Shown here in pieces: positions 1 to 63,689 of a stretch of 64,000 nucleotides of DNA. The translations under genes and the position numbers were made by a program. The notes under the pieces are model-generated. The model searched no databases. It was not told the DNA's origin and saw only the letters and a program-made list of their open reading frames with translations. Every line of letters begins with the position of its first letter. Positions within the stretch are counted from its first letter, which is position 1. The DNA is taken from the IMG/VR virus record IMGVR_UViG_3300044712_000810, positions 124,001 to 188,000 of that record, one strand, 5' to 3'.

Positions 1-620
1 GCAAGATCATAATATTCAATAGCTTTATCCGGGTTATTTAAATGATAAAGTTCAATATCACCATATAAAATATTTCCAGTCGGTGAATTAGGTTTTTTAC
101 TGAGTATTTGTTCGACAATTAATTGAGCGACATCATATTTTCCAAATTCCATATTAGTTTTAGCTTTATCAATAAGTTCACTCAATTCACCGTGTGGTTC
201 TATAACATTCGATAATTTTTCAACAAGAACATCAACAGAAACTGGTTTAATTACAAAATTTTTAGCACCAAGTTCATGATAAAGTGCTAATATATTTTTA
301 TGAGTCTCTGTAGTAACTATAATGGTTTTAACATTTTTAAAATTTGATGAAATAGTTCCCAAAATTGAAGTTACAAAACTATTTGAAAAAATCATATCAA
401 ACACAAAAATGATATTATTACTATCACATCGTTTAAGTTTTGAATACAAGTCAAGATCATTTGATGCAAATATAATTCGATCTAAAGTTGCACCAATATA
501 CTTAGTTACTGTAATTTTTAATAATTTGAAAAAACTACTATTTTCACCAAGATAAAATATATATCCATTATTTGAATGAAGATAATCGAAAACTGCTTTG
601 TCGTATTTAGTGTTTTTCAT
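1..620 (-). CDS. Receiver-like domain + TPR protein (runs off the window edge; not in ORF track)
   Basis: Manual translation from ATG 620: MKNTKYDK...IFVFDMIF...IIVTTE...ELGAKNFVIKPVSVDVLVEKL (receiver C-terminal KP motif), then TPR-like helices ..KPNSPTGNILYGD..DKAIEYY; open to base 1. Confidence 0.75.
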   Translation of the reverse strand, partial: MKNTKYDKAVFDYLHSNNGYIFYLGENSSFFKLLKITVTKYIGATLDRIIFASNDLDLYSKLKRCDSNNIIFVFDMIFSNSFVTSILGTISSNFKNVKTIIVTTETHKNILALYHELGAKNFVIKPVSVDVLVEKLSNVIEPHGELSELIDKAKTNMEFGKYDVAQLIVEQILSKKPNSPTGNILYGDIELYHLNNPDKAIEYYDL

Positions 621-623
621 CGA

Positions 624-1088
624 TTATCCTCCATCAGTCATTCTACGTAACTCTGTAAGTATATCTCTTACTTTGTCCGCATCTCCATCGATATCTGTAC
701 GACGTCTTGACATTGTTTGATGAGGACTGTGAACATCACCAAGAAAAATACTTTTCTTCAACGTAGACACGTCAGCTTCTATTTCACTAACTTTGCTTAA
801 AATGGTTTGTTGATTTGTAATAATATTATCAACTTTACCTGTTAAAAGTTTCAAATCATCTGAAACTTCTTTGACTTCGCTTTGGTTGTTTTCAACTAAA
901 TGTTTAGTAACCTCAGTATCAACACTTATAGTTCTAACACTTGCTTCGGTTTTATCAAATGTCAATCTCCATCGAAATTTTAATTCGAATATAAGGGCAA
1001 CTAGCGGAGCCATGCAAGTAATCAGAACCCAAGAAATACCTTGCCAAAACGTCACTGAAAATATTTCTTCTTTTATTGGAAATTCCAT
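624..1088 (-). CDS. Membrane-anchored coiled-coil protein
   Basis: N-terminal TM (GISWVLITCMAPLVALIF), heptad-rich C-terminus; tightly packed in operon. Confidence 0.6.
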   Translation of the reverse strand: MEFPIKEEIFSVTFWQGISWVLITCMAPLVALIFELKFRWRLTFDKTEASVRTISVDTEVTKHLVENNQSEVKEVSDDLKLLTGKVDNIITNQQTILSKVSEIEADVSTLKKSIFLGDVHSPHQTMSRRRTDIDGDADKVRDILTELRRMTDGG

Positions 1089-1090
1089 AT

Positions 1091-1420
1091 TTAATTACCC
1101 GCATTACAATTTTTATCAATCTCTGTTAAAATCAATTTATATGCATTTGGCACATGGTCCGATTTTCTCACATAAGTTTGAATTGCCCTTGGCGAATTCA
1201 ATGGATCAGACTTTTTAACACCGGTTAATTTCTCAAATACAATCTCATCAATACATAAATATATTTGTTCAGATTGTGCGGCTCTACTTTTTATTTGATC
1301 GTTAATATTTTTTGTAACTTGTTTACCATGTATACTATAATATAGCACACATATAAATAAACTTAAAATAGTCAATATAGATCCTATGTAACGTGTCATA
1401 TACACTCCATTAGTAAACAA
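1091..1420 (-). CDS. Small membrane-anchored protein
   Basis: One TM segment; overlaps upstream stop. Confidence 0.55.
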   Translation of the reverse strand: MFTNGVYMTRYIGSILTILSLFICVLYYSIHGKQVTKNINDQIKSRAAQSEQIYLCIDEIVFEKLTGVKKSDPLNSPRAIQTYVRKSDHVPNAYKLILTEIDKNCNAGN

Positions 1421-2444
1421 CTATATCATCAGTGAGTATAAGTTTAGAATATCCTAAATAATGAATTCTATTTAAATTCATACTTATAACACTGGTTGTA
1501 TTAAAAACTTGTGGAGTAACCGGTTTTCCATTGACTAATTTAATTAAAATATCACCAGCTTCTTCACCCATTTTTGAAAAAAATGGACCCACACAAGTTG
1601 ATAATCCAATTTTTGCAAATAGTGGATTTATACTAACTTCAAGATGTCTATTATTATGTTTTAATAATTCTTTAATAATTTCTTCTTTGCTTAATGTTTT
1701 CCCAGTCTCAAAGTTAAGTAATCTTTGTGCGGTGAGCATTATTAAACCAGATGGTTTACTTTGTAATTCATTAAGTGCTTTTTTAAATTGATGTAAAGTT
1801 TCACATTTAATAATGACTGGAGTTTCATTCATACTTTTTAAAATATTTCTATATTCATTAGCTATATATGTACTAGTTTCAGAACCATCGTCCGTTATAA
1901 TATAATATTTATCAATAACAACATTATGTTTCTTTAACATTTTAAAATAAGCAGTCATATTTGGAACTTCACATACACCGTATAAATTTTTAAGATTTAA
2001 TTCCGGTCTTTCAGAAATATAATCATTAATTGGTTTATTAACACCTGAAAAAATGACACGATACTTTGAAGACATTGGAATACCAACATATGAAAATGCG
2101 TTATCATCAGTTACATAAATAAAATCAGGTTTATATTTATTTATTTCAGCAATTGCCGTTTGTGATATGGATTTCATAGATTGTGGTGTAGTATTTTTAA
2201 CATTAGTTTCCATATATATAGCTGAGTAATCGATATCAAAGTTTTCATTTAATGCTGCTTTTATAACTTTTTTAAATCCATCATTTTGCGGATCAGTACA
2301 CACATGACCTTCATCATATGAATTAACAATATAAATTTTTAATAGTCTTTTATTTTCAGGATGTACTTGGACTGGTCCAGTCAAAATAATAGCAACGAAA
2401 ATAATAAAACTAAATAATATTTTTGACCAAGACCGAATATTCAT
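1410..2444 (-). CDS. Periplasmic ABC-type substrate-binding-like sensor protein
   Basis: Signal anchor; motifs PDFIYVTDDNA, VIFSGVN, GVCE, KMGEEAG..L.KLVNGKP typical of ABC_sub_bind-like sensory domains. Confidence 0.65.
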   Translation of the reverse strand: MNIRSWSKILFSFIIFVAIILTGPVQVHPENKRLLKIYIVNSYDEGHVCTDPQNDGFKKVIKAALNENFDIDYSAIYMETNVKNTTPQSMKSISQTAIAEINKYKPDFIYVTDDNAFSYVGIPMSSKYRVIFSGVNKPINDYISERPELNLKNLYGVCEVPNMTAYFKMLKKHNVVIDKYYIITDDGSETSTYIANEYRNILKSMNETPVIIKCETLHQFKKALNELQSKPSGLIMLTAQRLLNFETGKTLSKEEIIKELLKHNNRHLEVSINPLFAKIGLSTCVGPFFSKMGEEAGDILIKLVNGKPVTPQVFNTTSVISMNLNRIHYLGYSKLILTDDIVVY

Positions 2445-3082
2445 TATATATCTCCTAAAATTTCCAATATTTTATTTTTTGTTGTTTCGTCAAGAGTTTC
2501 TGCTAACTCTTTAAATTTAGTAATATGAATACTACATCTATTAATTTCAGATAATTGTGTTTCAACATTATCTGCAATCAATACAGTTGCATATGCTATA
2601 CCATCAGCATCATACAATAAACTACATGTAAATTTATAATGAGCTTTTAATGTTTCACAATATAAAATTGATGAAGATCTTTCTTTTTCAATTATACATT
2701 TTTTACGAGGACACTCAGTTGATGATACTTGGCCGAAACCAAAAAAATCATCAACTGTTCTTCCAAGAAAATCTTTATATCTAATATTAAATAATTCTTT
2801 AACTGCTTGGTTTGCACGCATTATGCGCCCGTCTAAATCTGTAATTACGATTAAATATGGTATTGCATCAAACGTATGTTCCCATTCAAGTTTCGCATCA
2901 TAAATCAATTTATTAGTCAGTGATAACTCTTCAAGTGTTTCAGATAATTTATCAACAAGTTCACTAATTTTTGAATTCTTCATATCATTTTCTTCAATTT
3001 GTTTAATATACGTTTGACACGATTCTTCCATTTTAATCATTTCTTCTCTACGTTCATCTGGTGACATATTTATTTTCCTCAA
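2444..3082 (-). CDS. Coiled-coil + PAS domain protein
   Basis: EWEHTFDAIPYLIVITDLDGRIMRANQA...FLGRT..DFFG...CP is a classic PAS signature. Confidence 0.75.
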   Translation of the reverse strand: MRKINMSPDERREEMIKMEESCQTYIKQIEENDMKNSKISELVDKLSETLEELSLTNKLIYDAKLEWEHTFDAIPYLIVITDLDGRIMRANQAVKELFNIRYKDFLGRTVDDFFGFGQVSSTECPRKKCIIEKERSSSILYCETLKAHYKFTCSLLYDADGIAYATVLIADNVETQLSEINRCSIHITKFKELAETLDETTKNKILEILGDI

Positions 3083-3501
3083 CTACCAACAACGGTGTCA
3101 TCTTTTAATAAATTTCGACTTAATAATAATTTGGTTATACAAACTATTATTCTATATTTAATGAGTTCCATTTCATGATGTTTAAAGAAAAAATCATCAG
3201 CACCAAGTTTAATTGCTTTTGAAATATCTTTAAATGAAGTTGAAACTGAACTGACAATAATATAACAGTCTAAGTCACCATCATGACGCATTTTATTTAA
3301 TGCTGGAAGAATATGAAATCCGGTTGTTCCAGGCATAATAAGGTCTAATAAAATGATATCAGGTTTAATTTCATTACATAATTTTAAACATTCTTCGCCA
3401 TTTCTGGCCTCATAAACTTCAAAATCATATAATTCAAGAAGGCCTTTATAGGTTGTTCTTGTCAGCTCGTCATCGTCGACTACTAATATTTTAAATATCA
3501 T
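3079..3501 (-). CDS. Single-domain response regulator (receiver)
   Basis: KILVVDDD...PDIILLDLIMPG..G...GADDFFFK. Confidence 0.85.
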   Translation of the reverse strand: MIFKILVVDDDELTRTTYKGLLELYDFEVYEARNGEECLKLCNEIKPDIILLDLIMPGTTGFHILPALNKMRHDGDLDCYIIVSSVSTSFKDISKAIKLGADDFFFKHHEMELIKYRIIVCITKLLLSRNLLKDDTVVGS

Positions 3502-3513
3502 GACACCCTCAAG

Positions 3514-3696
3514 TTATTGAATATTACGATTATTTTCCTGATTTTGTTTTTGAGCTACTTTAGACATGCCAGACACTTTCTTTAATTCATCCGAATCCTG
3601 TTTACCGCCATCGTTTTTAGATAACTCAGTAACATTGTCATATGGATTCGAAACAATTTCATCATACTCAACTAATACTTTTATAACGGAAATCAT
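3514..3696 (-). CDS. Small protein with MISVIKVLVE leader
   Basis: ORF with RBS; shares N-terminal leader with other late genes. Confidence 0.5.
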   Translation of the reverse strand: MISVIKVLVEYDEIVSNPYDNVTELSKNDGGKQDSDELKKVSGMSKVAQKQNQENNRNIQ

Positions 3697-3706
3697 TATT
3701 ATCTCC

Positions 3707-3967
3707 TTATCTAAGAACTTGTCTTGCTTTTATTTTAGCTCTAGAACCAAGTTTCTTACGCATTCTATCTTTTACTATATTTAATTGTTGACGATAGAAT
3801 TGATATTTCTTATAATCCATTTGATCGGATTTCTTTGCCATGAATACTGTTTCACGACCAGCTAAACGTGAACGTTTTTGAATTGCACCAGATCTAATCA
3901 TACTTGTTTTTACTTCTGCTAATATCATACCAGAAGTAATAGCCTCAAATAAACTATCAAAATTCAT
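3707..3967 (-). CDS. Basic hypothetical protein
   Basis: GGAG RBS; K/R-rich. Confidence 0.6.
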   Translation of the reverse strand: MNFDSLFEAITSGMILAEVKTSMIRSGAIQKRSRLAGRETVFMAKKSDQMDYKKYQFYRQQLNIVKDRMRKKLGSRAKIKARQVLR

Positions 3968-4027
3968 AGTTCCTCCAATAAAATCTGCAATACAGATATG
4001 ACTAAAAATATCTGTATTGCAGACATA

Positions 4028-7725: not shown

Positions 7726-7956
7726 CTACTTTTTCATACCTTCTTTTTTTGCTTGATTTTCCATCTTTTCAAGACGATCATAATAATCAGGTATTTCTGA
7801 TAAATGATCTTTAGCTATTGCTATTGCTACAGTTGGACTATTAGTGTGTTCCTTTTCTATTTTAACACCATGTTTTAATTCTTTATTATTGAAGGTTTTA
7901 TCAGGCACCCTGTCGTGCCTCCCAACATGTTGCAGAGTCTTTATAACACTTATCAT
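7726..7956 (-). CDS. DUF5661-like protein
   Basis: GVKIEKEHT...IAKDHLSEIPDYYDRLEKME matches a family recalled from large viruses. Confidence 0.7.
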   Translation of the reverse strand: MISVIKTLQHVGRHDRVPDKTFNNKELKHGVKIEKEHTNSPTVAIAIAKDHLSEIPDYYDRLEKMENQAKKEGMKK

Positions 7957-8320
7957 ATTTTGTTCCTAAATATTTTAAAATTATTTTACGAATATCACCA
8001 TATGAATATGGTTTAAAAATAATTTCATTAAATCCTGCTTGTTTCATTTCAAATATTGCTTCATCATCAGTAAATGCAGTTTGAGCTATAATCGGAGTTG
8101 AATAATTTGAATCTCTAATAAACTGTGCTATTTCAATTCCGTTTATATTAGGAAGTTGTATATCTAATAAAAATAAATCATATGTATTATTCATTATTTT
8201 ATTAATAGCTTCATAACCATCGTCGCATACATCATAATCCAAACCAAGTTTATCACAAATAGTCATTAAATACATTTCGTTGACTGCATTATCTTCTACT
8301 ATTAATATTCTAGGTCGCAT
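7901..8320 (-). CDS. Response regulator receiver (hybrid-kinase type)
   Basis: RILIVEDNAVN, DLFLLDIQLPNINGIE, PIIAQTA, IIFKPY. Confidence 0.9.
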   Translation of the reverse strand: MRPRILIVEDNAVNEMYLMTICDKLGLDYDVCDDGYEAINKIMNNTYDLFLLDIQLPNINGIEIAQFIRDSNYSTPIIAQTAFTDDEAIFEMKQAGFNEIIFKPYSYGDIRKIILKYLGTKYDKCYKDSATCWEARQGA

Positions 8321-8332
8321 GGACCACCTACT

Positions 8333-9871
8333 TTAGTCAATACGTTCAAATGGCAAAATAACTGAAAATACAGTTCCTTTACCAGGTTCACTACAAACGT
8401 GAATAGACCCTCCCATAAGTTCAATAAAACGAAGACAGATATTTAATCCTAGTCCAGTTCCAACGATAGTTTTAGTAAAACTAGTTTCAACTCTTGAAAA
8501 ACTATCAAAAATTTTATCTTGATATGGAGAAGGAATTCCAATACCGGAGTCTTCAACATTTAATCGAAGTTTATTATTTGATATTAATGATATGTGTAAA
8601 TTAACAAAACCTTTTTCTGTAAATTTAATAGCATTTCCTAATAAATTTATAAGAACTTGTTTAAATTTACTATCATCAATTTTAATAGATTGTGGTATAT
8701 CATCATCAATTTTAATATCAAATGTTAAACCTTTTTCTAATGTTTGTAATGTAACAATATTAGTCACAGATGAAACGCATCTTCTGAATACAGTTGATTT
8801 TGGTTCAAATTTATGAATACCATTTTCTATTTTAGATAAATCTAATATATCTTCAATTAATGCTAATAATGTTTTTGTTGCCTTTTTAGCATTACTTAAA
8901 TATATTTTTTGTTTTTCTAAATCTGTAGTATGAGAAAGTATTTCAATCATACCAAATACACCATTTAATGGTGTTCTAATTTCATGTGACATATTAGCTA
9001 AGAATGTACTTTTAGTTCTATTTGCATATTCAGCATGTTCTTTTGCTATTTGTAATTCTTTTACAGTATTTTGCAATTCATATACACGATCATCAATTAT
9101 TTGAAATAAATCCATTTCACGTTTTATAAGTCGATTTAAAAGATACATTGCTAAAATTAAAATAACAAACGTAAAGAATATAATTAAAATCGTTTTAAAT
9201 AACATATCAGAGAAATGAACTTCAAAATCGAAAATTTCAAAAATCTTACGTTCAGATAAACTTACACCAATAGTTAAATATATATCTGAATTATTTAATT
9301 TAAATGATCTCCAAGAAATATATTCTTTACCAAGATCATGTGACCATATATACCAATCATTACCATTAGTTGAATTTGAAATTCCAGAAAATAAATTATC
9401 AATATTCTTAGCACCACTCCAAATTTGATTTTTGAATACCGTTTTAATGTCATCTTGGTTTGGATGATTTCGATAATCTTTATCATATATAACCATTTCT
9501 GGAGTATACATAAATACATCATTACTATTAAATAGTTGAATATCATCAACAAAATATGGAACAATAAATTCATTTATAATCTTTAAATCAGGACAATCTG
9601 GTCTACTTTTCTTTTTTAATTCAAACTCTAATTGTATATTTTGTTCAATTATTTTTAAAAATTCATTTTCTAATAAATAAATACCATTAACGGCACTTCG
9701 AACTTCCCGATCATTATGTTCAAAATAATAATACACAAAAGTACAAGCTTGTACTATCCATATTACTGGCATTAGGATCTTTAAGATCTGATTTATCATA
9801 CGAATTTTATTTTTCATTTTATATCCTACTTTATAAATCGTCTTTATTCCATCCTTTATTAACGGCATCAT
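8333..9871 (-). CDS. Membrane sensor histidine kinase
   Basis: Two TMs flanking an extracytoplasmic domain; H-box [16 protein letters not shown]-box [15 protein letters not shown]1 [10 protein letters not shown]2 GTGLGL. Confidence 0.93.
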
Positions 9872-39990: not shown

Positions 39991-40087
39991 GCTCAGGCGC
40001 GGGTTCAAATCCCGTGGGGACCTCCAAAATGCTGGGAGTTTATATTCCTAGTATTCTGGGTCCCCTAGTTCAGTGGTAGAACGGAGT
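39991..40087 (+). ncRNA. Permuted tRNA-like module 2
   Basis: GCTC-AGGC-GCGGG TTCAAAT CCCGT-GGGGACC-T-CCA-(32 nt hairpin)-GGTCCCC-TA-GTTC AGTGGTA GAAC-G-GAGT. Confidence 0.85.
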
Positions 40088-40160
40088 CATTAAACTTACT
40101 TCGGAAGAACGCAATACTGAAATGTTTTGCCAAATATCTCAAAGATATTACCCAACAATA

Positions 40161-40198
40161 GGGGGTCGCGCAGGGTAGCGCGGCCTCCACCATTTTTT
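40161..40198 (+). terminator. Terminator hairpin that doubles as a tRNA-Ala-like minihelix
   Basis: GGGGGTCGCGC-AGGGTA-GCGCGGCCTCC-ACCA-TTTTTT. Confidence 0.75.
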
Positions 40199-40242
40199 AT
40201 TTATCCAAGTTTCATATAGAAATATAACCTGTAGGAGGGACT

Positions 40243-40455
40243 ATGGACACATCAAAATTTAAGATTTCGTACATGATCAACGGCCTTCCGGTTTACGATG
40301 TTAGATCTGGTGAAACACATGAGTTGTGGAAAACTGGTCGTAACTGTAAGAATATTGGGCTTACTGAAAGTGAAGCCCACAACGTATTAGATCAACAATT
40401 TAAAGGAATTTCATCCGAACAATTCGACGAGTTCTGGGAAGGTTACCACAACTAG
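40243..40455 (+). CDS. Hypothetical protein
   Basis: Promoter + AGGAGG. Confidence 0.65.
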   Translation: MDTSKFKISYMINGLPVYDVRSGETHELWKTGRNCKNIGLTESEAHNVLDQQFKGISSEQFDEFWEGYHN

Positions 40456-40464
40456 GAGACGTTC

Positions 40465-40749
40465 ATGCGCTGGGAAAAAACAGGACACATGTCTGAACAA
40501 CTTCGAATTACACCAACAATGGTGGTTGAAGTTTTTCAAGGTACTGTTCAATGCAGTTCCGCAACATGGGTTGGAGTAAAATTCTGCGATAAATTAATTA
40601 AAGATGGCGGAACATTCGAAGAAGCCAAAAGATTCGCAGAAGCGTGGATTAAACATGAAATTGCCAGAGCTGTAGAATCCGTTAAAATAATGGAAGCCCC
40701 TGGAGAACATATACCTGTTGTAAATGTTCTCTATCGGCCAGAAGATTAA
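40465..40749 (+). CDS. Hypothetical protein
   Basis: GGAG RBS; terminator follows. Confidence 0.65.
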   Translation: MRWEKTGHMSEQLRITPTMVVEVFQGTVQCSSATWVGVKFCDKLIKDGGTFEEAKRFAEAWIKHEIARAVESVKIMEAPGEHIPVVNVLYRPED

Positions 40750-40771
40750 CAGTGGGGGCGAGAGCCCCCAT

Positions 40772-41692
40772 TTACTTTATTTTTGCTTCATTTCTATTAA
40801 AACTTTGTAATTCAGTTCTTGATACTTCCATTGCTTTAAGACCTAATACTGATAAACTCTTAACCGGTATAAATCCGCCTGATATTTTATTTGGTGCCAA
40901 GTCAATATTGACTCGACCTGGAACACGTTTATGTGCTATTGAATACTTCTTAAGCATATCAGGAGTATTAATCATATACATTAATTTGTCTTTAATTTCA
41001 TTTATTCTCATTTGTTTCTTAAACAGAATTTGAATATGAAATCCAGTTTTACCAGTGAATACAATACGTGCAGATTCAACATCCGAATACTTTATTACAT
41101 AATCATAAATATCTTCGGCTGCTTTCTTATTATTTTCAAAGTTATCACTATCAATGTCCAAAAGTCCAAACCATTCACGTTCACCCATTTCACAATGAAT
41201 ACTTAGGGTTCGGCCGGAGATCTTATTTTCGTAGTTTGAACTGTTAAGTTTTATATATCCTGATGGTGATTCAGAATCTTTTCGTTTAACAATTGTTGAA
41301 TTCAATTCAGGAACTATAAAAAATATTAAGTTTCTATTATTGGTTTCATCAATTATTTCTTTTTTGTGTTTCATATAATAATCATGAACATCTTTTTGAG
41401 TCAAACCAGATGGATAAAATTCATTTTTAACTATTACAGTATCTGGATTTTCTAATTGTTTTGTTTGTGGTAATATTTCTTGTATTCTTCCTACTTGCCC
41501 ATCTTCTAATCTTACTTTAATACCACGTGTATGTTGTGATTTGCTTGTGAGAATATCTTTAACTATGCCGGTTGTTAATTTACCTGTAGGTTGATCTTTC
41601 TTTAATACTATATTTACTTTAATACCAGGCTTAATATTCGCTCTATAAAAATTATCGCTTTCGAACATGTTTGTCATACATAGTGAAAACAT
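40772..41692 (-). CDS. YwbE-like domain fused to LigD-type primase-polymerase (AEP) domain
   Basis: N-term IKPGIKVNIVLKKDQPTGKLTTGIVKDILT..HTRGIKVRLEDGQVGRIQEI; C-term LTQKDVHDYY, LLDIDSD, FTGKTGFHIQI. Confidence 0.8.
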   Translation of the reverse strand: MFSLCMTNMFESDNFYRANIKPGIKVNIVLKKDQPTGKLTTGIVKDILTSKSQHTRGIKVRLEDGQVGRIQEILPQTKQLENPDTVIVKNEFYPSGLTQKDVHDYYMKHKKEIIDETNNRNLIFFIVPELNSTIVKRKDSESPSGYIKLNSSNYENKISGRTLSIHCEMGEREWFGLLDIDSDNFENNKKAAEDIYDYVIKYSDVESARIVFTGKTGFHIQILFKKQMRINEIKDKLMYMINTPDMLKKYSIAHKRVPGRVNIDLAPNKISGGFIPVKSLSVLGLKAMEVSRTELQSFNRNEAKIK

Positions 41693-41943
41693 TGAATATT
41701 CTCCATTTTGATATAGAAATTTTATTTATGAAGGAGGTAAAATTGTGCAACAAAAACTAGGGGTGGTGCCCTATGTTAGTTGAACGTTTTTACGCGGGAG
41801 AGAAATCAGTGAGTAAATGTTGGATTCTAATATTTGTCATTTTGGCACTGATCTCATTTCAAGATGCATGGTTATTGAAACTTATATTCCATTAACGCCA
41901 TATTAAAAATATATTACGGAGATGCATGGGCGTCTCCGTTTAT

Positions 41944-42171
41944 TTATATGTTTCCACACATTCTTTTAAATGTGTCACATTCGGCTTTACTTAAGAAACA
42001 ACACGGTGTTGACATGAACCATTTTCGACCAGGACAATAAAATTTATTTAAATATGGGAAATTACAACATTCTGTTATTAACTTTATTTTTTTATTTCCA
42101 AAGATAATATGTTCATTCGTCTCTTGTATTTCCCACAACATATGAATTCGTCCTAAGTATTTTATACACAC
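41944..42171 (-). CDS. Small Cys-rich protein
   Basis: ORF with several Cys; coupled to upstream gene. Confidence 0.45.
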   Translation of the reverse strand: MCIKYLGRIHMLWEIQETNEHIIFGNKKIKLITECCNFPYLNKFYCPGRKWFMSTPCCFLSKAECDTFKRMCGNI

Positions 42172-42313
42172 GTTTAGTTCTTAATAAAGCGGCTCTCTCA
42201 ATTTTTTCTTCATCCCAATCTGGATGTTCTTCTGAAACTTTTTTATGTATTTTATTAAATAAAGTTTCAAAGATTTCTTTTTCGGTTATTTTATCTTCCA
42301 TAATAACCTCCAT
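42113..42313 (-). CDS. Hypothetical protein
   Basis: GGAGG RBS. Confidence 0.55.
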   Translation of the reverse strand: MEVIMEDKITEKEIFETLFNKIHKKVSEEHPDWDEEKIERAALLRTKRVYKILRTNSYVVGNTRDE

Positions 42314-42387
42314 ATATAATGTTATATTTTAATAATTTGGTTATTTATATAGAAATAGTCAATTAAAACAGTCCAAGGAGGACGTTA

Positions 42388-42567
42388 TGATTCATACGTT
42401 AATTGATAATATTGAAAAGGCATTCGCATCAATTCCAACCGCAGCAGCCGATAAAGATTTATTGGATGACTATGAACTTTTACTTGATATGCAAATTGGT
42501 ATCGTTGAAAAAGACGATATTGTTATTTATGCAATAAAGGAAAAGTTCCATGCCAATTACAATTAAT
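42388..42567 (+). CDS. 59-aa protein
   Basis: Promoter at 42346, AGGAGG RBS, MIHTLIDNIEKAF... Confidence 0.55.
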
Positions 42568-42942
42568 GCCAAATTTAAACCTGGTCAAAAAGTAAGAATT
42601 AATCTTGGTGAAGATGGATCTTTTGTTGCAACCATTGATGGTGTAGCAATAAACAAAGATCGTATATTCTATTGCGTATCTGCCGGTGGCATACGATTAT
42701 ATACAATTGAAGAAAAAGTCATTGAAGATCTTTATTTTGGTGACAATAATAAAATGATAAGTCAGATCTTCGAGCACATTGCATTTGATTGGACATTTGA
42801 CGATGTTCCCCGTATAATGGGTAAAGAAAATATTGATATTGCCCAACGCTTATATGAATTTCAAGATATTATGACAGTTCGTGAGTTAACAGAAGAAGAA
42901 CAACATGAACTTAATAGATTATATTTGGAATACGCTTGTTAA
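42550..42942 (+). CDS. Hypothetical protein
   Basis: SH3-like N-terminus KFKPGQKVRI; helical C-terminus. Confidence 0.65.
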   Translation: MPITINAKFKPGQKVRINLGEDGSFVATIDGVAINKDRIFYCVSAGGIRLYTIEEKVIEDLYFGDNNKMISQIFEHIAFDWTFDDVPRIMGKENIDIAQRLYEFQDIMTVRELTEEEQHELNRLYLEYAC

Positions 42943-43270
42943 TGATTGGTCATTTTTTGTAATATATTTTATAGTAAGTATAATTGCAAGAATTATAGGA
43001 TCATTTGTATTTGAATTTAACACATCATTATATAATTTGCGTAAATTTTTAATGAATATTAAATGTATCATCAATCCACAATTTAAAGAAATGGTTGATT
43101 TAGTTGAAACTATTCTTAAATTTATACGTAATTATGAATATCATGATGATAATGATAAAAGGTCAATACATTATAAAGTCCGACAAATACGATATGATTT
43201 ACTAGCATATCGAGAATATACTGAAGAAGATAAATTATTTCTTCAGAAACTACTACTGGAGTTGCTATGA
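42905..43270 (+). CDS. Membrane protein ending LQKLLLELL
   Basis: TM segment + shared C-terminal motif. Confidence 0.6.
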   Translation: MNLIDYIWNTLVNDWSFFVIYFIVSIIARIIGSFVFEFNTSLYNLRKFLMNIKCIINPQFKEMVDLVETILKFIRNYEYHDDNDKRSIHYKVRQIRYDLLAYREYTEEDKLFLQKLLLELL

Positions 43271-43473
43271 AAAAAATCAAAAGACTTAATAGTAATGCAA
43301 ATAGAAAAGAATTATCTTCAATTTTAGATTTATTTAATATCTCTATTGTTAGATATATGACGATCGATGATCTTCGTGAATTACGTAGACTTGATCATGT
43401 TGTAAATAAATTTAAATTTGTATCGTATATAAATGTAATAGCAGGACAAAAACTTCTTACGAGATGTTTATGA
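43267..43473 (+). CDS. Small protein, QKL-tail family
   Basis: ATGA coupling; ends GQKLLTRCL. Confidence 0.6.
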   Translation: MKKIKRLNSNANRKELSSILDLFNISIVRYMTIDDLRELRRLDHVVNKFKFVSYINVIAGQKLLTRCL

Positions 43474-43667
43474 CAATATTCTTTAATCCTGAAGATGATA
43501 AAGAAATATATTCACAAGTTGTTGGATTGTTATATCCAATGTTATATTATCGTGATCATATGACGGATGAAGATTCTCAAATGTGTTATGATTTAGCTGC
43601 TCATCGTTGGTTACAAACTGAAGAAGATTTGTTAACCGCCCAAAAGTTGGTTATAAAGTATATATGA
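43464..43667 (+). CDS. Small protein, QKL-tail family
   Basis: Ends AQKLVIKYI. Confidence 0.6.
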   Translation: MFMTIFFNPEDDKEIYSQVVGLLYPMLYYRDHMTDEDSQMCYDLAAHRWLQTEEDLLTAQKLVIKYI

Positions 43668-43834
43668 CTAGACGAGAACAATTTCGGGCACTTATATTTG
43701 AAATAGAGAAAATAAAATCAACATTGTCTACTGAAGATCAAATTTGGTTTAATCGATTTCGGTGGACAAGACGCCATCGACTTCTCAATTCACATTTAGT
43801 TAAACTCCAAAAATTACTTATAAAGTATATATGA
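43664..43834 (+). CDS. 56-aa protein, QKL-tail family (not in ORF track)
   Basis: MTRREQFRAL...LQKLLIKYI; ATGA overlaps at both ends. Confidence 0.65.
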   Translation: MTRREQFRALIFEIEKIKSTLSTEDQIWFNRFRWTRRHRLLNSHLVKLQKLLIKYI

Positions 43835-44025
43835 CAAACCGAGAACAGCTTCGAGTATTAAGAGATGAATTATATAAGATATATAAACAAATGGATGATA
43901 AAGATAAAAATACTTTTGATGATCTTGATCGGTTATTTCCATATATATGGTTAACTGGTCAACTTCCTAAAGTTAGAAAAGAACATATAATCAAAGCTCA
44001 AAAAATACTTATAAAGCATATTTAG
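43831..44025 (+). CDS. Small protein, QKL-tail family
   Basis: MTNREQLRVL...AQKILIKHI. Confidence 0.65.
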   Translation: MTNREQLRVLRDELYKIYKQMDDKDKNTFDDLDRLFPYIWLTGQLPKVRKEHIIKAQKILIKHI

Positions 44026-59882: not shown

Positions 59883-60152
59883 TTAAAGGTGTTTAATTAA
59901 TATTTTTTGTATTTCTTCTCTCATGCCATAGTCCATAAATTCAAAAATTACATCTTTTAATGTAACACATTCTGTTACATTTTTACGTCTGAACCATATT
60001 TCATAGTCTTTAAATTTAATTGATATAATATGCGTTTTATCACCACGCCATACACATTCTGTTTGTATATAATTTATAAGTTCATCAATTAATACATTTT
60101 TATGATTATTCGATTGCATCAATTCATATAGTTCTAGATCTCCGGGTTTCAT
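59883..60152 (-). CDS. Array-family protein
   Basis: Ends FMDYGMREEIQKILIKHL. Confidence 0.7.
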   Translation of the reverse strand: MKPGDLELYELMQSNNHKNVLIDELINYIQTECVWRGDKTHIISIKFKDYEIWFRRKNVTECVTLKDVIFEFMDYGMREEIQKILIKHL

Positions 60153-60406
60153 AAGTGTTCAATTAATGCTTTAAGCATTTTAAGTTTCATATCCTCATCA
60201 AAGAAAGGATCTATTATTGAATGAAAGTTTGTAGTTGGTACAACTTCATGATCTTTATATCTATAAATCATTCGTTCATTCATTGCATCCCATTCCCATT
60301 TTATATTCAATAAATTATGCCAATCAGGATATTTACTTGATCTTAATCCAAATGCATAATAGAATTGATCTATTATCTTATAATCTTCATCACTAATACG
60401 TGTCAT
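60149..60406 (-). CDS. Array-family protein
   Basis: Ends FFDEDMKLKMLKALIEHL. Confidence 0.7.
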   Translation of the reverse strand: MTRISDEDYKIIDQFYYAFGLRSSKYPDWHNLLNIKWEWDAMNERMIYRYKDHEVVPTTNFHSIIDPFFDEDMKLKMLKALIEHL

Positions 60407-60660
60407 ATATTCTCCACTATAAATTTCTTTAAGTTAAGTTCCATATCATCGTCAAGCATTTCTTTTACTATATTTTTACCATCAAAGTCATCATAATAAA
60501 CTTTAGATCTTAAACCTTTATATTCATATCCAATATATCTTTCCTCAGTGTCTTTATCCATCATTTGATATATATTAATTCCTAAATAATTTAATAACAA
60601 TCTTCTACCATTAGATAATCTAAATGCTATATCAAGTAATTCTTTTTGTTCATCTGTCAT
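60403..60660 (-). CDS. Array-family protein
   Basis: Ends MLDDDMELNLKKFIVENI. Confidence 0.7.
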   Translation of the reverse strand: MTDEQKELLDIAFRLSNGRRLLLNYLGINIYQMMDKDTEERYIGYEYKGLRSKVYYDDFDGKNIVKEMLDDDMELNLKKFIVENI

Positions 60661-60929
60661 AGTTGTTCCAACAAATACTTTTGCATGTTCACCCGAAGAT
60701 CTTCATCCCAGAAATGTCGGAATGCATTGCGTAATCCTTTTTTATATGGAATTCCATTTTCATGTTTATGTAATTGACCTTTATATTCATATAAGTTACC
60801 TTGAATGACTCCCTGGTGAATTATAAAGAAGTATTTAATGCCAATTTTTTTACATACATCTTCAGTCGATTCTAATTTGTCAGAAACTGAAATGTATGTT
60901 CTCATTAGTTGAAAGTCTGAACGAGTCAT
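60657..60929 (-). CDS. Array-family protein
   Basis: Ends FWDEDLRVNMQKYLLEQL. Confidence 0.7.
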   Translation of the reverse strand: MTRSDFQLMRTYISVSDKLESTEDVCKKIGIKYFFIIHQGVIQGNLYEYKGQLHKHENGIPYKKGLRNAFRHFWDEDLRVNMQKYLLEQL

Positions 60930-60937
60930 ATCTCTCC

Positions 60938-61225
60938 TTATATGTTTTGTATTATGTACTTCTGTATTAGAAGTGCCAACTCATCATCAACAAGTTTACA
61001 AATACATGACGCAATATAACTTATATAAAACTCATCATTAAGTCCATTTCTATATTCACGAAGTGTATCAACAAATTTAAATTTATAAGTTTTATTCTTA
61101 TATGTTAATGACCAATAATCTTCTAAATGATCATAATCCAAATCAAATAATGAATTCACGAAAAACTCATCACTGTTTTTATGAACTAAATTGCAATAAG
61201 TATAGACTAGATCATAATGTTTCAT
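60938..61225 (-). CDS. Array-family protein
   Basis: Ends LVDDELALLIQKYIIQNI. Confidence 0.7.
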   Translation of the reverse strand: MKHYDLVYTYCNLVHKNSDEFFVNSLFDLDYDHLEDYWSLTYKNKTYKFKFVDTLREYRNGLNDEFYISYIASCICKLVDDELALLIQKYIIQNI

Positions 61226-61479
61226 ATTAGGTCAAGTACTTCACGTTGGATTTTTATCTTTATGTCATCATCCCAAAAGTATTTAATGACTGCACGTTTA
61301 ATAGTCATAGATCTTTTGACCGATCCTTTCTTGATTTCATCTCTGTGTATGCCGTGTCGTTTATAGTAAAATGTCTTATTCGCAGTATTATATTCAATAC
61401 CAAGATCTTCTAATAATCTGGTATTGTTTCGTTTATATAAGAACGTATTAAGCATTTGACATTCAACAACAGTTAACAC
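61222..61479 (-). CDS. Array-family protein
   Basis: Ends FWDDDIKIKIQREVLDLI. Confidence 0.7.
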   Translation of the reverse strand: MLTVVECQMLNTFLYKRNNTRLLEDLGIEYNTANKTFYYKRHGIHRDEIKKGSVKRSMTIKRAVIKYFWDDDIKIKIQREVLDLI

Positions 61480-61748
61480 TACAACTCCTCCAAAATGATT
61501 CTTTGTATTTTAAGTTCTAAATCAAAATCCATAAGTGTTTCCATATTTTTAAGAAATGCTTTTTGTGAATATGAGAATACTGATTCAATTTCATAATCTT
61601 TATAATTTAATCTATCAGTATATCCTCTAATATCAAGACTATATTCAGCTCTTTCACATTCAATTCCAAGTTTTTCATACAACTCGCCTGTTTGAGTTTT
61701 ACCATGATATAGTATTAATAAATTCTTTTGCATTTCATTTAAACTCAT
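61479..61748 (-). CDS. Array-family protein
   Basis: Ends LMDFDLELKIQRIILEEL. Confidence 0.7.
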   Translation of the reverse strand: MSLNEMQKNLLILYHGKTQTGELYEKLGIECERAEYSLDIRGYTDRLNYKDYEIESVFSYSQKAFLKNMETLMDFDLELKIQRIILEEL

Positions 61749-62038
61749 AAAACCTCCACTAATATTTTTTGTATTGCTATCCGCATATCATCATCCAGTG
61801 CTTGTAATATTAAATCACCCATAAAAAGTATATCTCTTTCTCTAGTAATATTATACAATACATAATGCATATATACATTATCTTTATATTTTACATAAAA
61901 TACTTTTGATTCGTCATTATTATTCCAATCTGTATCATAATCACAATCAAATCCTATATTTGAAAAGAATCCATCCAATTCATTATCTGAATGATATTCA
62001 GCATACATAGTTACAAGTGCAATATCGGCTTCGATCAT
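61745..62038 (-). CDS. Array-family protein
   Basis: Ends ALDDDMRIAIQKILVEVL. Confidence 0.7.
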   Translation of the reverse strand: MIEADIALVTMYAEYHSDNELDGFFSNIGFDCDYDTDWNNNDESKVFYVKYKDNVYMHYVLYNITRERDILFMGDLILQALDDDMRIAIQKILVEVL

Positions 62039-62328
62039 ACTAACTCAATAATATACTTTTGCATTTCAAGTCGCATGTCTTCATCAAACAAAACCTCCAA
62101 AGCAGGATACATGTCACGGTGAAAATCAAAGAATGCTCGTGCATGTGGAATATAAACTCGATGTTTATATTTAATTTGATCACCAATACACACATATTCT
62201 TTATTAAATCTATATTTGTATTTGATTTTAAATCGTTCAAATAATTCACGTCTTGATATTAATCTGTTGTCATATATTAACTCAACAAATATATTTATTA
62301 ATTTACGATCATCTGCATTATCTGTCAT
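62035..62328 (-). CDS. Array-family protein
   Basis: Ends LFDEDMRLEMQKYIIELV. Confidence 0.7.
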   Translation of the reverse strand: MTDNADDRKLINIFVELIYDNRLISRRELFERFKIKYKYRFNKEYVCIGDQIKYKHRVYIPHARAFFDFHRDMYPALEVLFDEDMRLEMQKYIIELV

Positions 62329-62606
62329 ACTCGTTCAACCACATATTTCATCATATTAAGATACATATCATCATCCATAAGTGTTAATATTATATTAGAT
62401 AAAGTTGGTGGATTTTGCATTTCAGTTCCACGTTCAATAACTTTATCATTATACTTGTATACTGTGACTTCACCAAGATCTTCTTCATCATAAACACTTC
62501 GTTTAATTCCTAATGGAATAAATAGCTTTATATTAAAATACCCTGGTCTTTCTTTACTTCTAAAGAAATTCATATATGTAGTTAATAGTTGTTCTCTGTT
62601 TGTCAT
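62325..62606 (-). CDS. Array-family protein
   Basis: Ends LMDDDMYLNMMKYVVERV. Confidence 0.7.
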   Translation of the reverse strand: MTNREQLLTTYMNFFRSKERPGYFNIKLFIPLGIKRSVYDEEDLGEVTVYKYNDKVIERGTEMQNPPTLSNIILTLMDDDMYLNMMKYVVERV

Positions 62607-62842
62607 ATTAACTCCAGTAACAGTTTTTGATACTGAACTAACAAATCAGGATCTTTAAATGCCTTAACAATAGCAGATACATCTTCAATGGTTAGATGTT
62701 TATTAACCATGCGATATTCATAATTGGAATCACGTTTATAAAATCTAACTTTACCAACTTTATATTTATACATATCCATTCTAATATTTAACGCATTAAT
62801 AATCCAATACGACCAACCATCTAAATTTGTTTCAGGAGCCAT
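62603..62842 (-). CDS. Array-family protein
   Basis: Ends FKDPDLLVQYQKLLLELI. Confidence 0.65.
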   Translation of the reverse strand: MAPETNLDGWSYWIINALNIRMDMYKYKVGKVRFYKRDSNYEYRMVNKHLTIEDVSAIVKAFKDPDLLVQYQKLLLELI

Positions 62843-63111
62843 TTGTTGTACCTTATAGTTAGTTGTTCATCATCAAACTTACGTATTAGTATCCATAAGT
62901 TATATAAGTCATTAGGAAATTGTCGTTTAATAACAATCTTACCATAGTGTTTAGTCCATGCATTATCGGATGGGCCGGAATATTTAAATTGATATTTAGT
63001 TACGACTTTTCTATGTAAGTCATACGTATCTACTGATTTGAATTCACTATATGTTATATTTAATTCAAACAAAATTTGTGACATTCGATGAAATGTAATA
63101 TGTTTATTCAT
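62821..63111 (-). CDS. Array-family protein
   Basis: Ends FDDEQLTIRYNKWLLKQI. Confidence 0.65.
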   Translation of the reverse strand: MNKHITFHRMSQILFELNITYSEFKSVDTYDLHRKVVTKYQFKYSGPSDNAWTKHYGKIVIKRQFPNDLYNLWILIRKFDDEQLTIRYNKWLLKQI

Positions 63112-63359
63112 ACAAGTAACAACAATATTTTTTGATATTGAATTTTTAGATCAATATTATCAAATTCATTCACAATAGATTCAATATCTTCTAAACATGT
63201 TACATATTCTTTACGAATTACTTCTTTATTTTTAAATGAAAATTTATATCCATCATCAAAGTTATGATACATATGAGTTTTTATCTTTAACCCATCAAGT
63301 ATCATACGAAACCGTTTGGTTGAATAAAGAATCATTACCGATTTGCCAAGAAGGTTCAT
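63108..63359 (-). CDS. Array-family protein
   Basis: Ends FDNIDLKIQYQKILLLLV. Confidence 0.7.
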   Translation of the reverse strand: MNLLGKSVMILYSTKRFRMILDGLKIKTHMYHNFDDGYKFSFKNKEVIRKEYVTCLEDIESIVNEFDNIDLKIQYQKILLLLV

Positions 63360-63589
63360 ATAAGCTCCAGTAGAAGTCGTTGATATGCGATTGTTAGTTC
63401 TTCATCGTTGATAAATTCAACGATATCGGCAAGTCCATCAATAGTTACTGGGGCAGTACCCATGATACCAATGCGTTTACCTTTATAAAATATAGCAGAA
63501 GTCGGTGTGACTTTATCATTTTCATAAATTGTAGACATTTTGATATTATTATCACGAGTAAATTTAATAAGACAATCAAAAGGATTCAT
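63356..63589 (-). CDS. First gene of the array operon
   Basis: Start reassigned to ATG 63589 (GGAGG RBS, promoter 63615-63625); ends INDEELTIAYQRLLLELI. Confidence 0.7.
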   Translation of the reverse strand: MNPFDCLIKFTRDNNIKMSTIYENDKVTPTSAIFYKGKRIGIMGTAPVTIDGLADIVEFINDEELTIAYQRLLLELI

Positions 63590-63647
63590 TTTATCCTCCT
63601 TAATACACCAAACTATTTCTATATGAAAAGTTATAAAACTAAAAAAT

Positions 63648-63678
63648 GGGCTATACGAGATCTTAGCCCGTATAGCCC
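63648..63678 (-). terminator. Terminator upstream of the array promoter
   Basis: GGGCTATACG/CGTATAGCCC 10-bp stem with A-run. Confidence 0.7.
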
Positions 63679-63689
63679 AATAAAAAAAC

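What the first reader, a model, noticed from the sequence alone, without database searches (positions are those of the whole stretch)
1..3501. Second signalling cluster built from split modules: receiver, PAS, periplasmic binding-type sensor, two membrane proteins, receiver-TPR
Seen: six translationally coupled genes, each supplying one part normally fused in a single multidomain sensor (REC; coiled-coil+PAS; ABC_sub_bind-like periplasmic domain; TM proteins; REC-like+TPR). No kinase core or output domain is present in the cluster. Inference: a dismembered or modular sensory complex that may plug into the HK at 8333-9871 or rewire host signalling, co-expressed with virion genes.
Basis: partly seen in the sequence, partly recalled or inferred. 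Interest (0 to 1): 0.62.

Follow-up and report, generated by a model that had tools for sequence, protein, structure and literature searches.

The report
Split signalling operon in jumbo phage
A 315-kb phage carries, among its tail genes, a conserved six-gene operon of separate sensor parts built around a membrane ligand-binding cassette that recurs in other large phages, so some phages probably sense their surroundings with their own multi-protein receptor.

Summary
Window 1-3501 (minus strand) carries six tightly packed genes:
- g1: a canonical receiver.
- g2: a coiled-coil plus PAS protein.
- g3: a membrane-anchored binding protein with the PF04392 (ABC_sub_bind) fold.
- g4 and g5: two single-pass membrane proteins.
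- g6: a divergent receiver plus TPR protein. It runs off the window edge and is 440 aa in full.

The window lies in a complete 314,837-bp phage genome from a rhizosphere metagenome.

The genes are not decaying fragments. A diverged relative (31-62% amino-acid identity) keeps all six as separate intact genes in the same order, and every gene has pN below pS.

The core is a three-gene cassette: binding protein, a ~100-aa membrane protein, and a ~120-165-aa membrane plus coiled-coil protein. It recurs in at least six other phage contexts, including the cultured Erwinia phage pEa_SNUABM_5, usually without receiver or PAS genes.

Fused versions (binding domain with PAS-GGDEF-EAL or with a kinase) occur only in distant bacterial relatives, and their domain order differs from the phage gene order.

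The phage also has one histidine kinase plus receiver 4.4 kb upstream and one PAS-HD-GYP enzyme 6.5 kb downstream.

The function is inferred: a multi-protein transmembrane sensor. Binding, phosphotransfer and expression are untested.

The parts
3079..3501 (-). g1: stand-alone canonical response-regulator receiver, 140 aa
   Evidence: Pfam Response_reg E 1.1e-21, 77.5 bits. Alignments to solved receivers and to the phage's other receivers keep D9/D10, D53 and K107. 62% identical to the orthologue in L016.
2444..3067 (-). g2: N-terminal coiled coil plus PAS domain, 207 aa from the ATG at 3067
   Evidence: PAS_4 E 1.4e-9, PAS_9 E 9.5e-8. Homologues in L016 (45%) and L003 (39%) sit directly upstream of a g3 homologue. 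The motif CPRxxC (C119, C124) is invariant in all three.
1410..2444 (-). g3: binding protein of periplasmic-binding-protein type (PF04392-like fold), 344 aa, with an N-terminal hydrophobic helix that is a signal anchor or signal peptide
   Evidence: 561 homologues at E<=1e-3, most of them 320-400 aa and stand-alone. AF2 model pLDDT 94. Foldseek top hits are 6hnj, 3lkv and 3lft, then LuxP. Hydrophobic helix at residues about 9-29. Single copy in the genome.
1091..1399 (-). g4: small single-pass membrane protein, 102 aa from the ATG at 1399
   Evidence: N-terminal hydrophobic helix. 37-39% identical to the orthologue in L016/L017. Proteins of the same size and build follow g3 homologues in L005, L006, L014, L018, L020 and the P0010 contig. 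No fold or family was assigned.
624..1088 (-). g5: single-pass membrane protein with a long C-terminal coiled coil, 154 aa
   Evidence: Hydrophobic helix at residues about 14-40. Weak DUF948 match, E 0.005. 31% identical to the L016 orthologue. The same build sits at the same position in L004, L005, L006, L014 and L020. Charge distribution around the helix suggests N-out, C-in; this is my inference.
1..620 (-). g6: divergent receiver plus TPR protein. This is the first 206 codons; the full 440 aa continue to G000:C1:123298, outside the window
   Evidence: TPR_2 80.4 bits; Response_reg only 17.6 bits. CheY E 4.5e-5 in the PDB. Atlas structural neighbours are receiver-TPR clusters (TM 0.89-0.92) and canonical receivers (about 0.73). 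D75, T103/104 and K125-P126 are kept, but only one of the two N-terminal acidic residues. 59% identical to the L016 orthologue.
3514..3967 (-). Two small upstream genes (86 aa at 3707-3967, 60 aa at 3514-3696) that belong to the same tightly packed block
   Evidence: 10-12 nt spacers. 63-64% identical orthologues at the same place in L016. The 86-aa protein weakly matches a PHROG 'virion structural protein' family, E 0.0011.
3983..4024 (-). Perfect 17-bp hairpin between the 611-aa baseplate-like gene and the block; a possible terminator or RNA-processing site
   Evidence: Terminator-like scan and the sequence itself. A hairpin sits at the equivalent place in L016, and a GC-rich hairpin follows the 682-aa structural gene in both phages.
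7901..9871 (-). Neighbouring kinase pair: histidine kinase (8333-9871) and its own separate receiver (7901-8320). This is the only kinase in the phage genome that could feed g1 and g6
   Evidence: HisKA 69 bits, HATPase_c 92 bits, Response_reg 86 bits. The catalytic core is closest to the hybrid kinases TorS, BarA and LuxQ. Genome-wide there are 3 receivers, 1 true kinase and no Hpt.

Best explanation
The six genes are a conserved, selected phage operon that encodes a signal-transduction assembly made of separate proteins.

Its core is a phage-borne membrane cassette of three proteins:
- g3, a ligand-binding protein tethered outside the cytoplasmic membrane.
- g4 and g5, two single-pass partners. 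g5 carries a coiled coil that probably lies in the cytoplasm.

This phage lineage has added three cytoplasmic proteins:
- g1, a phosphorylatable receiver.
- g2, a coiled-coil plus PAS protein with a conserved cysteine pair.
- g6, a divergent receiver fused to a TPR protein-binding platform.

Proposed working, all inferred:
1. A small ligand binds g3.
2. The change passes through the membrane helices of g3, g4 and g5 to the g5 coiled coil, and on to g2.
3. Phosphoryl groups from the phage's own kinase at 8333-9871, or from host kinases, set the state of g1 and g6.
4. The output is by protein-protein contact through the TPR domain, and possibly through the PAS-HD-GYP phosphodiesterase encoded 6.5 kb downstream.

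Shown here: gene structure, domain folds, conservation, selection and recurrence of the cassette.
Inferred: topology, all contacts, phosphotransfer, ligand, output and timing.
For: - Tight packing with ribosome-binding motifs before each gene.
- Domain and fold assignments.
- Full synteny of all six genes plus flanks in a diverged relative, L016/L017, at 31-62% identity with gene lengths within about 10%.
- pN below pS in all six genes, with synonymous sites near saturation.
- The PAS and binding-protein pair is also adjacent in a third contig, L003.
- The cassette of binding protein, ~100-aa membrane protein and membrane plus coiled-coil protein recurs in L004, L005/L006, L014, the P0010 contig, L018 (partial) and Erwinia phage pEa_SNUABM_5.
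- Distant bacterial homologues carry the binding domain fused to signalling modules: PAS-GGDEF, GGDEF-EAL, PAS-PAS-GGDEF-EAL and a HisKA_2 kinase.
- The phage genome has no ABC ATPase above the family cut-off, so g3 does not serve a phage-encoded importer.
- A kinase plus receiver and a PAS-HD-GYP lie on the same strand nearby.
Against: - No direct evidence for any contact. Co-folding of g3, g5 and g4 gave no verdict.
- In most other phages the cassette has no REC, PAS or TPR neighbours. It must therefore be able to work without them, and its function need not be classical signalling.
- Structural and lysis genes separate the kinase from the cluster. Kinase conservation in the relative could not be checked, because the contig ends.
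- There is no Hpt in the genome, although the kinase core is of the hybrid type.
- The Erwinia homologue of g3 lacks the N-terminal third and the hydrophobic helix.
- There are no expression data.
Confidence: 0.5

Rival explanations
1. The three-gene membrane cassette (g3-g5) is a late-infection envelope device. It could be a lysis-timing or antiholin-like sensor, or a superinfection-exclusion module. Under this reading the receiver, PAS and TPR genes only tune it in this lineage and it is not a general signalling pathway.
For: - The cassette sits among tail, baseplate or lysis genes in the window, L005/L006, L004 (directly before a GH108 endolysin), L018 and the Erwinia phage.
- It occurs without REC or PAS in most contexts.
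- All three proteins are membrane proteins.
Against: - There is no similarity to known holins, antiholins, spanins or exclusion proteins in Pfam, PHROGs or NCBIfam.
- In two contexts the cassette lies beside replication-type genes: a DNA ligase, and PhoH plus a sigma factor.
- Charge distribution suggests the g5 coiled coil is cytoplasmic, the opposite of an i-spanin. This is my inference.
Confidence: 0.22
2. g3 is a LuxP/TorT-type co-sensor. It docks on the periplasmic domain of the phage kinase at 8333-9871 and gates its activity. The rest of the cluster then receives phosphoryl groups from that kinase.
For: - The kinase core is closest to TorS and LuxQ-type kinases.
- LuxP is among the best structural matches of g3.
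- This is the only kinase in the genome, there are three receivers, and all lie within 10 kb on one strand.
Against: - g3 and the kinase are not adjacent. The g3 cassette occurs in other phages with no kinase in the flanks that were available.
- The kinase sensor domain has no detectable relatives, and its fold could not be modelled (pLDDT 50).
- g3's best fold matches are PF04392 amino-acid binders rather than LuxP.
Confidence: 0.15
3. The six genes are merely neighbours. They would be independently acquired accessory genes packed together by phage genome economy, with no shared function.
For: - The cassette and the REC, PAS and TPR genes have different distributions.
- Jumbo phages accumulate many unrelated accessory genes (PMC7824862).
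Against: - Order and adjacency of all six are conserved at 31-62% identity.
- The PAS and binding-protein adjacency appears in a third contig.
- All six proteins carry domains typical of one functional class.
Confidence: 0.1
4. The genes are decaying fragments of a captured multidomain host sensor.
For: Fused bacterial homologues exist.
Against: - All six are intact in two diverged phages, with pN below pS.
- Each gene has its own ribosome-binding motif.
- The gene order is not colinear with the fused domain order.
- The closest g3 relatives are stand-alone proteins.
Confidence: 0.03

Closest known systems
PF04392 (ABC_sub_bind) solute-binding proteins, e.g. Clostridioides difficile CD0873 (6HNJ), S. 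pneumoniae 3LFT, V. cholerae 3LKV
   Same: Same two-lobed type I binding fold. These are the best structural matches of the g3 model (Foldseek probability 1.0, TM by target 0.66-0.73). A set of polar residues is conserved across the g3 family, but whether they line the binding cleft was not checked.
   Different: Sequence identity is only 13-16%, and the Pfam score is below the cut-off. There is no ABC permease or ATPase in the phage. g3 is paired with two small membrane proteins instead of a transporter.
Bacterial sensors with an N-terminal PF04392-type domain fused to PAS-GGDEF-EAL or to a histidine kinase (e.g. loci L011 Thiodiazotropha, L010 Desulfobacterales; P0107, P0121)
   Same: The same binding domain is used as an extracytoplasmic input to PAS, c-di-GMP or kinase modules. 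In L011 the neighbours are a hybrid kinase (36% identical to the phage kinase) and a REC-HD-GYP (47% identical to the phage HD-GYP).
   Different: Those are single polypeptides, and they are only 24-29% identical to g3. In the phage the parts are separate genes in a different order, with two extra membrane proteins and a receiver-TPR protein.
LuxP-LuxQ and TorT-TorS (a periplasmic binding protein gating a hybrid histidine kinase)
   Same: A separate binding protein and a TorS/LuxQ-like kinase core occur in the same genome.
   Different: The two genes are not adjacent. No contact has been shown. g3 is membrane-tethered and comes with its own membrane partners.
Receiver-TPR proteins of Thermodesulfobacteriota (ESM Atlas clusters of about 340-455 aa)
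   Same: Same two-domain architecture as g6. The N-terminal domain superposes at TM 0.89-0.92.
   Different: No detectable sequence relatives of the g6 receiver part were found by word search, apart from g6 itself. The function of those bacterial proteins is also unknown.
Phage-encoded small-molecule sensing (from my own knowledge: the VqmA homologue of Vibrio phage VP882; arbitrium AimR)
   Same: The concept of a phage carrying its own receptor to read chemical cues.
   Different: Those are single cytoplasmic receptor-regulators in temperate phages. Here it is a multi-protein membrane assembly in the late-gene region of a jumbo phage, with no DNA-binding output in sight.

Membership tests
Response regulator receiver (PF00072) - g1 | Profile score above the curated cut-off | tested here: met
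   77.5 bits against 30.2.
Response regulator receiver (PF00072) - g1 | Acidic pair, phospho-acceptor Asp and conserved Lys | tested here: met
   D9/D10, D53 and K107 align with the conserved columns. The Ser/Thr position is probably S84/S85.
Response regulator receiver (PF00072) - g6 N-terminal domain | Profile score above the curated cut-off | tested here: not met
   17.6-18.8 bits against 30.2, and only the C-terminal half aligns.
Response regulator receiver (PF00072) - g6 N-terminal domain | Receiver fold and phosphorylation-site residues | tested here: inconclusive
   Fold: TM 0.72-0.74 to canonical receivers and CheY E 4.5e-5. D75, T103/104 and K125-P126 are kept and conserved in the relative. 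The acidic pair is reduced to one residue (E26; D in the relative). The HMMER and MAFFT alignments differ by two positions at the acceptor Asp.
PAS domain - g2 | Profile score above the curated cut-off | tested here: met
   PAS_4 38.6 against 23.1; PAS_9 32.7 against 27.
PF04392 ABC_sub_bind - g3 | Profile score above the curated cut-off | tested here: not met
   12.6 bits against 25.9. More distant homologues of g3 do pass the cut-off.
PF04392 ABC_sub_bind - g3 | Type I periplasmic-binding-protein fold closest to solved PF04392 members | tested here: met
   Model pLDDT 94. Top hits are 6hnj, 6hni, 3lkv and 3lft.
PF04392 ABC_sub_bind - g3 | Works with an ABC permease and ATPase | tested here: not met
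   No ABC_tran match above the cut-off in the complete phage genome. Use of a host transporter cannot be excluded.
TPR proteins - g6 C-terminal part | Profile score above the curated cut-off | tested here: met
   TPR_2 80.4 against 27; TPR_12 69 against 30.1.
Two-component phosphotransfer system (kinase 8333-9871 with g1 or g6) | Kinase with HisKA and HATPase_c, plus receivers, in the same genome | tested here: met
Two-component phosphotransfer system (kinase 8333-9871 with g1 or g6) | Phosphotransfer from this kinase to these receivers | not testable with these tools
   Needs in vitro phosphotransfer profiling.
LuxP-LuxQ / TorT-TorS type sensor pair | Binding-protein gene adjacent to the kinase gene, and binding to the kinase periplasmic domain | tested here: not met
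   The genes are 4.4 kb apart with lysis and structural genes between them. Binding was not tested. The kinase sensor model was unusable.
Spanin (i-spanin) - g5 | N-in/C-out topology with a periplasmic coiled coil, and a partner outer-membrane lipoprotein gene | tested here: inconclusive
   The build (one helix plus coiled coil, 154 aa) resembles an i-spanin. Positive charges follow the helix in all six homologues, which suggests the coiled coil is cytoplasmic (my inference). No lipobox gene was seen. No PHROG lysis-family match.

The most novel reading that the evidence does not exclude
Many large phages carry their own three-protein transmembrane receptor: a tethered ligand-binding protein plus two single-pass partners. 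It would read an extracellular or periplasmic chemical cue late in infection. In this lineage it has been wired into a phage-encoded phosphorelay and cyclic-nucleotide circuit (kinase, three receivers, PAS, TPR, HD-GYP). The phage could then adjust lysis timing, host behaviour or defence signalling to its surroundings.
Probability: 0.25. Interest if true: 0.8.

Novelty: new variant of a known kind. Interest (0 to 1): 0.58.

Why it matters
Chemical sensing by phages is known mainly from single cytoplasmic receptors in temperate phages. Here a lytic-looking jumbo phage keeps a multi-protein membrane sensor under selection, next to its own kinase, receivers and a cyclic-nucleotide phosphodiesterase.

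The three-gene core cassette is uncharacterised (PHROG 'unknown function'). It is spread over several phage lineages and is present in the cultured Erwinia amylovora phage pEa_SNUABM_5, so it can be tested at the bench.

It also gives a natural example of a sensor built from separate polypeptides, where bacteria use one fused protein. That is useful for understanding how signals cross the membrane between separate chains.

Tried and rejected
- Co-folding of g3, g5 and g4: score 0.00, no verdict. This is not evidence either way.
- AF2 of the kinase sensor domain from a single sequence: pLDDT 50, unusable. I could not ask whether it resembles the LuxQ or TorS sensor domains.
- Single-protein scans of IMG/VR with g3 and with the kinase, and megablast of 10 kb against GenBank phages: nothing.
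- Word-index searches with the g6 receiver part and with the kinase sensor part: only the query itself came back.
- Metagenome scan with the kinase: only generic kinases at 27% identity, so kinase conservation in the relative remains unknown.
- Sequencing-run search: one DNA run (rhizosphere metagenome, probably the source sample) and no RNA. Co-expression could not be tested and read laying was not used.
- Sigma-70 promoter scan: not above the shuffled controls.
- g3 against the kinase N-terminus by BLASTP: no similarity.
- g4 in the ESM Atlas: no usable fold match.
- Alternative stop-codon reading of the window: the standard code already gives dense coding, so no recoding is proposed.
- Literature term searches: no description of this cassette in the library that was searched. 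That does not prove absence.


Full report
SETTING

The window is bases 124,001-188,000 of a 314,837-bp virus record with direct terminal repeats. It is rated complete, has about 30% G+C, and was found in one rhizosphere metagenome run.

The left 26 kb of the window is a minus-strand block of virion and lysis genes: tail-fibre-like proteins, a baseplate-like 611-aa protein and a GH108 endolysin. So this is a jumbo phage, and the finding lies inside its late-gene region.

THE OBSERVATION

Six minus-strand genes fill bases 1-3501. Reading the DNA, I placed the starts of g2 and g4 at ATGs (3067 and 1399) that follow GAGG and GGAG motifs, rather than at the listed TTGs. The spacers between genes are then 11, -1, 10, 2 and 3 nt. 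The sixth gene runs off the window. Its full length is 440 aa (G000:C1:123298-124620).

DOMAINS

- g1 is a canonical receiver (77.5 bits). It has the acidic pair, the acceptor Asp and the Lys.
- g2 has an N-terminal coiled coil and a PAS domain (PAS_4 E 1.4e-9). A CPRxxC motif is invariant in its three known homologues.
- g3 barely touches Pfam ABC_sub_bind (E 0.078), so I checked it further.
  - An exhaustive HMMER search gave 561 relatives, most of them stand-alone proteins of similar length.
  - A model built from 49 of them has pLDDT 94.
  - Its best PDB matches are the PF04392 amino-acid binders CD0873, 3LKV and 3LFT, followed by LuxP.
  - g3 has one N-terminal hydrophobic helix.
- g4 (102 aa) and g5 (154 aa) each have one N-terminal hydrophobic helix. 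g5 continues as a coiled coil.
- g6 has strong TPR repeats and an N-terminal receiver-like domain.
  - The receiver part is below the Pfam cut-off.
  - It matches CheY structures (E 4.5e-5).
  - It superposes on receiver-TPR and canonical receiver clusters in the ESM Atlas.
  - It keeps the acceptor Asp, the Thr and the Lys-Pro, but only one of the two N-terminal acidic residues.

NOT DECAY

The only close homologue of g2 (45% identity) lies on a 9.8-kb metagenome contig. The same contig was recovered twice, as L016 and L017, at 100% nucleotide identity. It carries the whole neighbourhood in the same order. Identities to the window are given in brackets.

- 613-aa baseplate-like gene (52%)
- two small genes (63-64%)
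- one extra 71-aa gene
- REC (62%)
- PAS (45%)
- binding protein (45%)
- small membrane protein (37-39%)
- membrane plus coiled-coil protein (31%)
- receiver-TPR (59%)
- a 127-aa gene (65%)
- a 635-aa virion or tail-fibre-like gene (74%; PHROG hits)
- two small genes
- a PAS-HD-GYP gene (52%)

All six genes are intact and of similar length. Every one has pN well below pS, with synonymous sites near saturation. The split layout is therefore ancestral to both phages and is maintained by selection. A third contig (L003) again has a PAS gene (39%) directly before a g3 homologue (41%).

A CASSETTE INSIDE THE CLUSTER

Contexts of other g3 relatives show a recurring trio. A binding protein with an N-terminal helix is followed by a ~95-118-aa protein with an N-terminal helix, and then by a ~100-165-aa protein with an N-terminal helix and a coiled coil.

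- L005/L006 (IMG/VR): between the tail sheath and a T4-type baseplate gene.
- L014: after a DNA ligase.
- L004: directly before a GH108 endolysin. Here the middle 66-aa protein shows no hydrophobic helix.
- The P0010 contig: beside PhoH and a sigma-factor-like gene.
- L018: near the terminase and T4 gp13; the contig ends within the middle gene, so only the first two members are seen.
- Erwinia phage pEa_SNUABM_5 (cultured, 267 kb): among tail-fibre genes. Its g3 homologue is shorter, at 253 aa, and has no N-terminal helix. It matches the g3 family profile with hhalign probability 97%, E 3.5e-11.

None of these has REC, PAS or TPR neighbours. The sequence similarity of the two small proteins across these phages is weak, but the alignments are consistent.

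In all homologues of g5 the positive charges follow the helix, which suggests a cytoplasmic coiled coil. The g4 homologues usually carry two cysteines in the C-terminal part, which would fit a periplasmic location. Both points are my inference.

RELATION TO FUSED SENSORS

The distant bacterial relatives of g3 (24-29% identity) include several fusions:
- binding domain with PAS and GGDEF;
- binding domain with GGDEF and EAL;
- binding domain with PAS-PAS-GGDEF-EAL (Thiodiazotropha, L011);
- binding domain with a HisKA_2 kinase (Desulfobacterales, L010).

In L011 the neighbours are a hybrid kinase 36% identical to the phage kinase and a REC-HD-GYP 47% identical to the phage HD-GYP. The phage therefore uses the same domain vocabulary as bacterial c-di-GMP and two-component networks.

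The phage gene order (REC, PAS, binding protein, membrane, membrane, REC-TPR) is not the fused order (binding domain, membrane helix, PAS, output). The closest g3 relatives are also stand-alone. This argues for assembly from modules and against fission of one gene.

THE REST OF THE PHAGE'S SIGNALLING SET

Genome-wide there are three receiver matches: g1, g6 and the one at 7901-8320. There is one true histidine kinase, at 8333-9871.
- Its core is of the TorS/BarA/LuxQ hybrid type.
- Its own receiver is a separate gene 12 nt downstream, with its own ribosome-binding motif.

There is one HD-GYP, fused to PAS, at G000:C1:116681-117757. There is no GGDEF, no Hpt and no ABC ATPase above the cut-off. 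HD-GYP enzymes have been noted in jumbo phages before and were proposed to be counter-defence enzymes (PMC7824862).

TRANSCRIPTION UNIT

A perfect 17-bp hairpin follows the 611-aa gene (3983-4024). A GC-rich hairpin follows the 682-aa structural gene downstream of g6. Hairpins sit at the equivalent places in the relative.

These would bracket a ten-gene unit: two small genes, g1-g6, a 124-aa gene and the tail-fibre-like gene. This is a layout observation only. Promoter scans were not above chance, and no RNA data exist.

INTERPRETATION

The best-supported reading is a multi-protein transmembrane sensor: a phage cassette (g3-g5) coupled in this lineage to cytoplasmic signalling proteins (g1, g2, g6). 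Phosphoryl input would come from the phage kinase or from host kinases. Output would go through the TPR platform and perhaps the HD-GYP.

The main rival is that the cassette is a late envelope device for lysis timing or superinfection control. That would fit its usual place among tail and lysis genes and its occurrence without REC or PAS.

A LuxP/LuxQ-like pairing of g3 with the phage kinase is possible, but I could not test it. The kinase sensor domain has no detectable relatives and could not be modelled. Co-folding of g3, g5 and g4 returned no verdict. Decay of a fused gene is contradicted by the conservation data.

VERDICT

The finding is a new arrangement of known signalling domains around an uncharacterised, recurrent phage membrane cassette. 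It is of moderate to high interest, and the Erwinia phage makes it testable.

Noticed in passing
window 59883-63715 (-): Tandem array of at least 14 small genes (79-119 aa), mostly overlapping by 4 nt. They are paralogous (blastp E 1e-3 to 1e-8) and share an acidic, leucine-rich C-terminal motif.
   Followed up: partly
window 7901-9871 (-): The kinase has a hybrid-type (TorS/BarA/LuxQ-like) core, but its receiver is a separate gene 12 nt downstream with its own ribosome-binding motif. No Hpt domain exists anywhere in the phage genome. The kinase sensor domain has no detectable relatives.
   Followed up: partly
L002:8681-9757 (-) = G000:C1:116681-117757, 6.5 kb left of the window: PAS plus HD-GYP (HD_5, E 1.7e-38) phosphodiesterase. 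It is the only such gene in the genome, is 52% identical to its counterpart in the relative, and is 47% identical over the HD domain to a Thiodiazotropha REC-HD-GYP.
   Followed up: partly
L002:10021-12234 (-) = G000:C1:118021-120234: A 737-aa tail-fibre gene with a C-terminal Peptidase_S74 chaperone domain lies between the structural gene and the HD-GYP gene. It is absent from the same place in the relative L017. This looks like a host-range cassette gained or lost.
   Followed up: no
L002:14907-15281 (-) and L002:12800-14848 (-): The 124-aa protein just downstream of g6 shares its last ~66 residues (37-39% identity) with the C-terminus of the following 682-aa tail-fibre-like protein, in both phages.
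   Followed up: no
window 3983-4024 (-) and L002:12765-12784: A perfect 17-bp hairpin and a GC-rich 8-bp hairpin flank a ten-gene block that contains the cluster. Hairpins occur at the equivalent positions in the relative.
   Followed up: partly
L020 (Erwinia phage pEa_SNUABM_5, MW366843.1 59417-61018): A cultured jumbo phage carries a shortened homologue of g3 followed by two small membrane proteins of the same build as g4 and g5. All three are annotated 'hypothetical protein' and lie between tail-fibre genes.
   Followed up: partly
window 2696-2713 (-), g2 residues 119-124: An invariant CPRxxC motif lies inside the PAS domain of all three known homologues. It might be a redox or metal site.
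   Followed up: no
window 40001-44000: Coding density by long open frames is lower here: 0.59 of bases lie in frames of 80 codons or more, against 0.77 or more (mostly above 0.9) elsewhere. This holds under the standard code, and alternative stop readings do not clearly rescue it.
   Followed up: no
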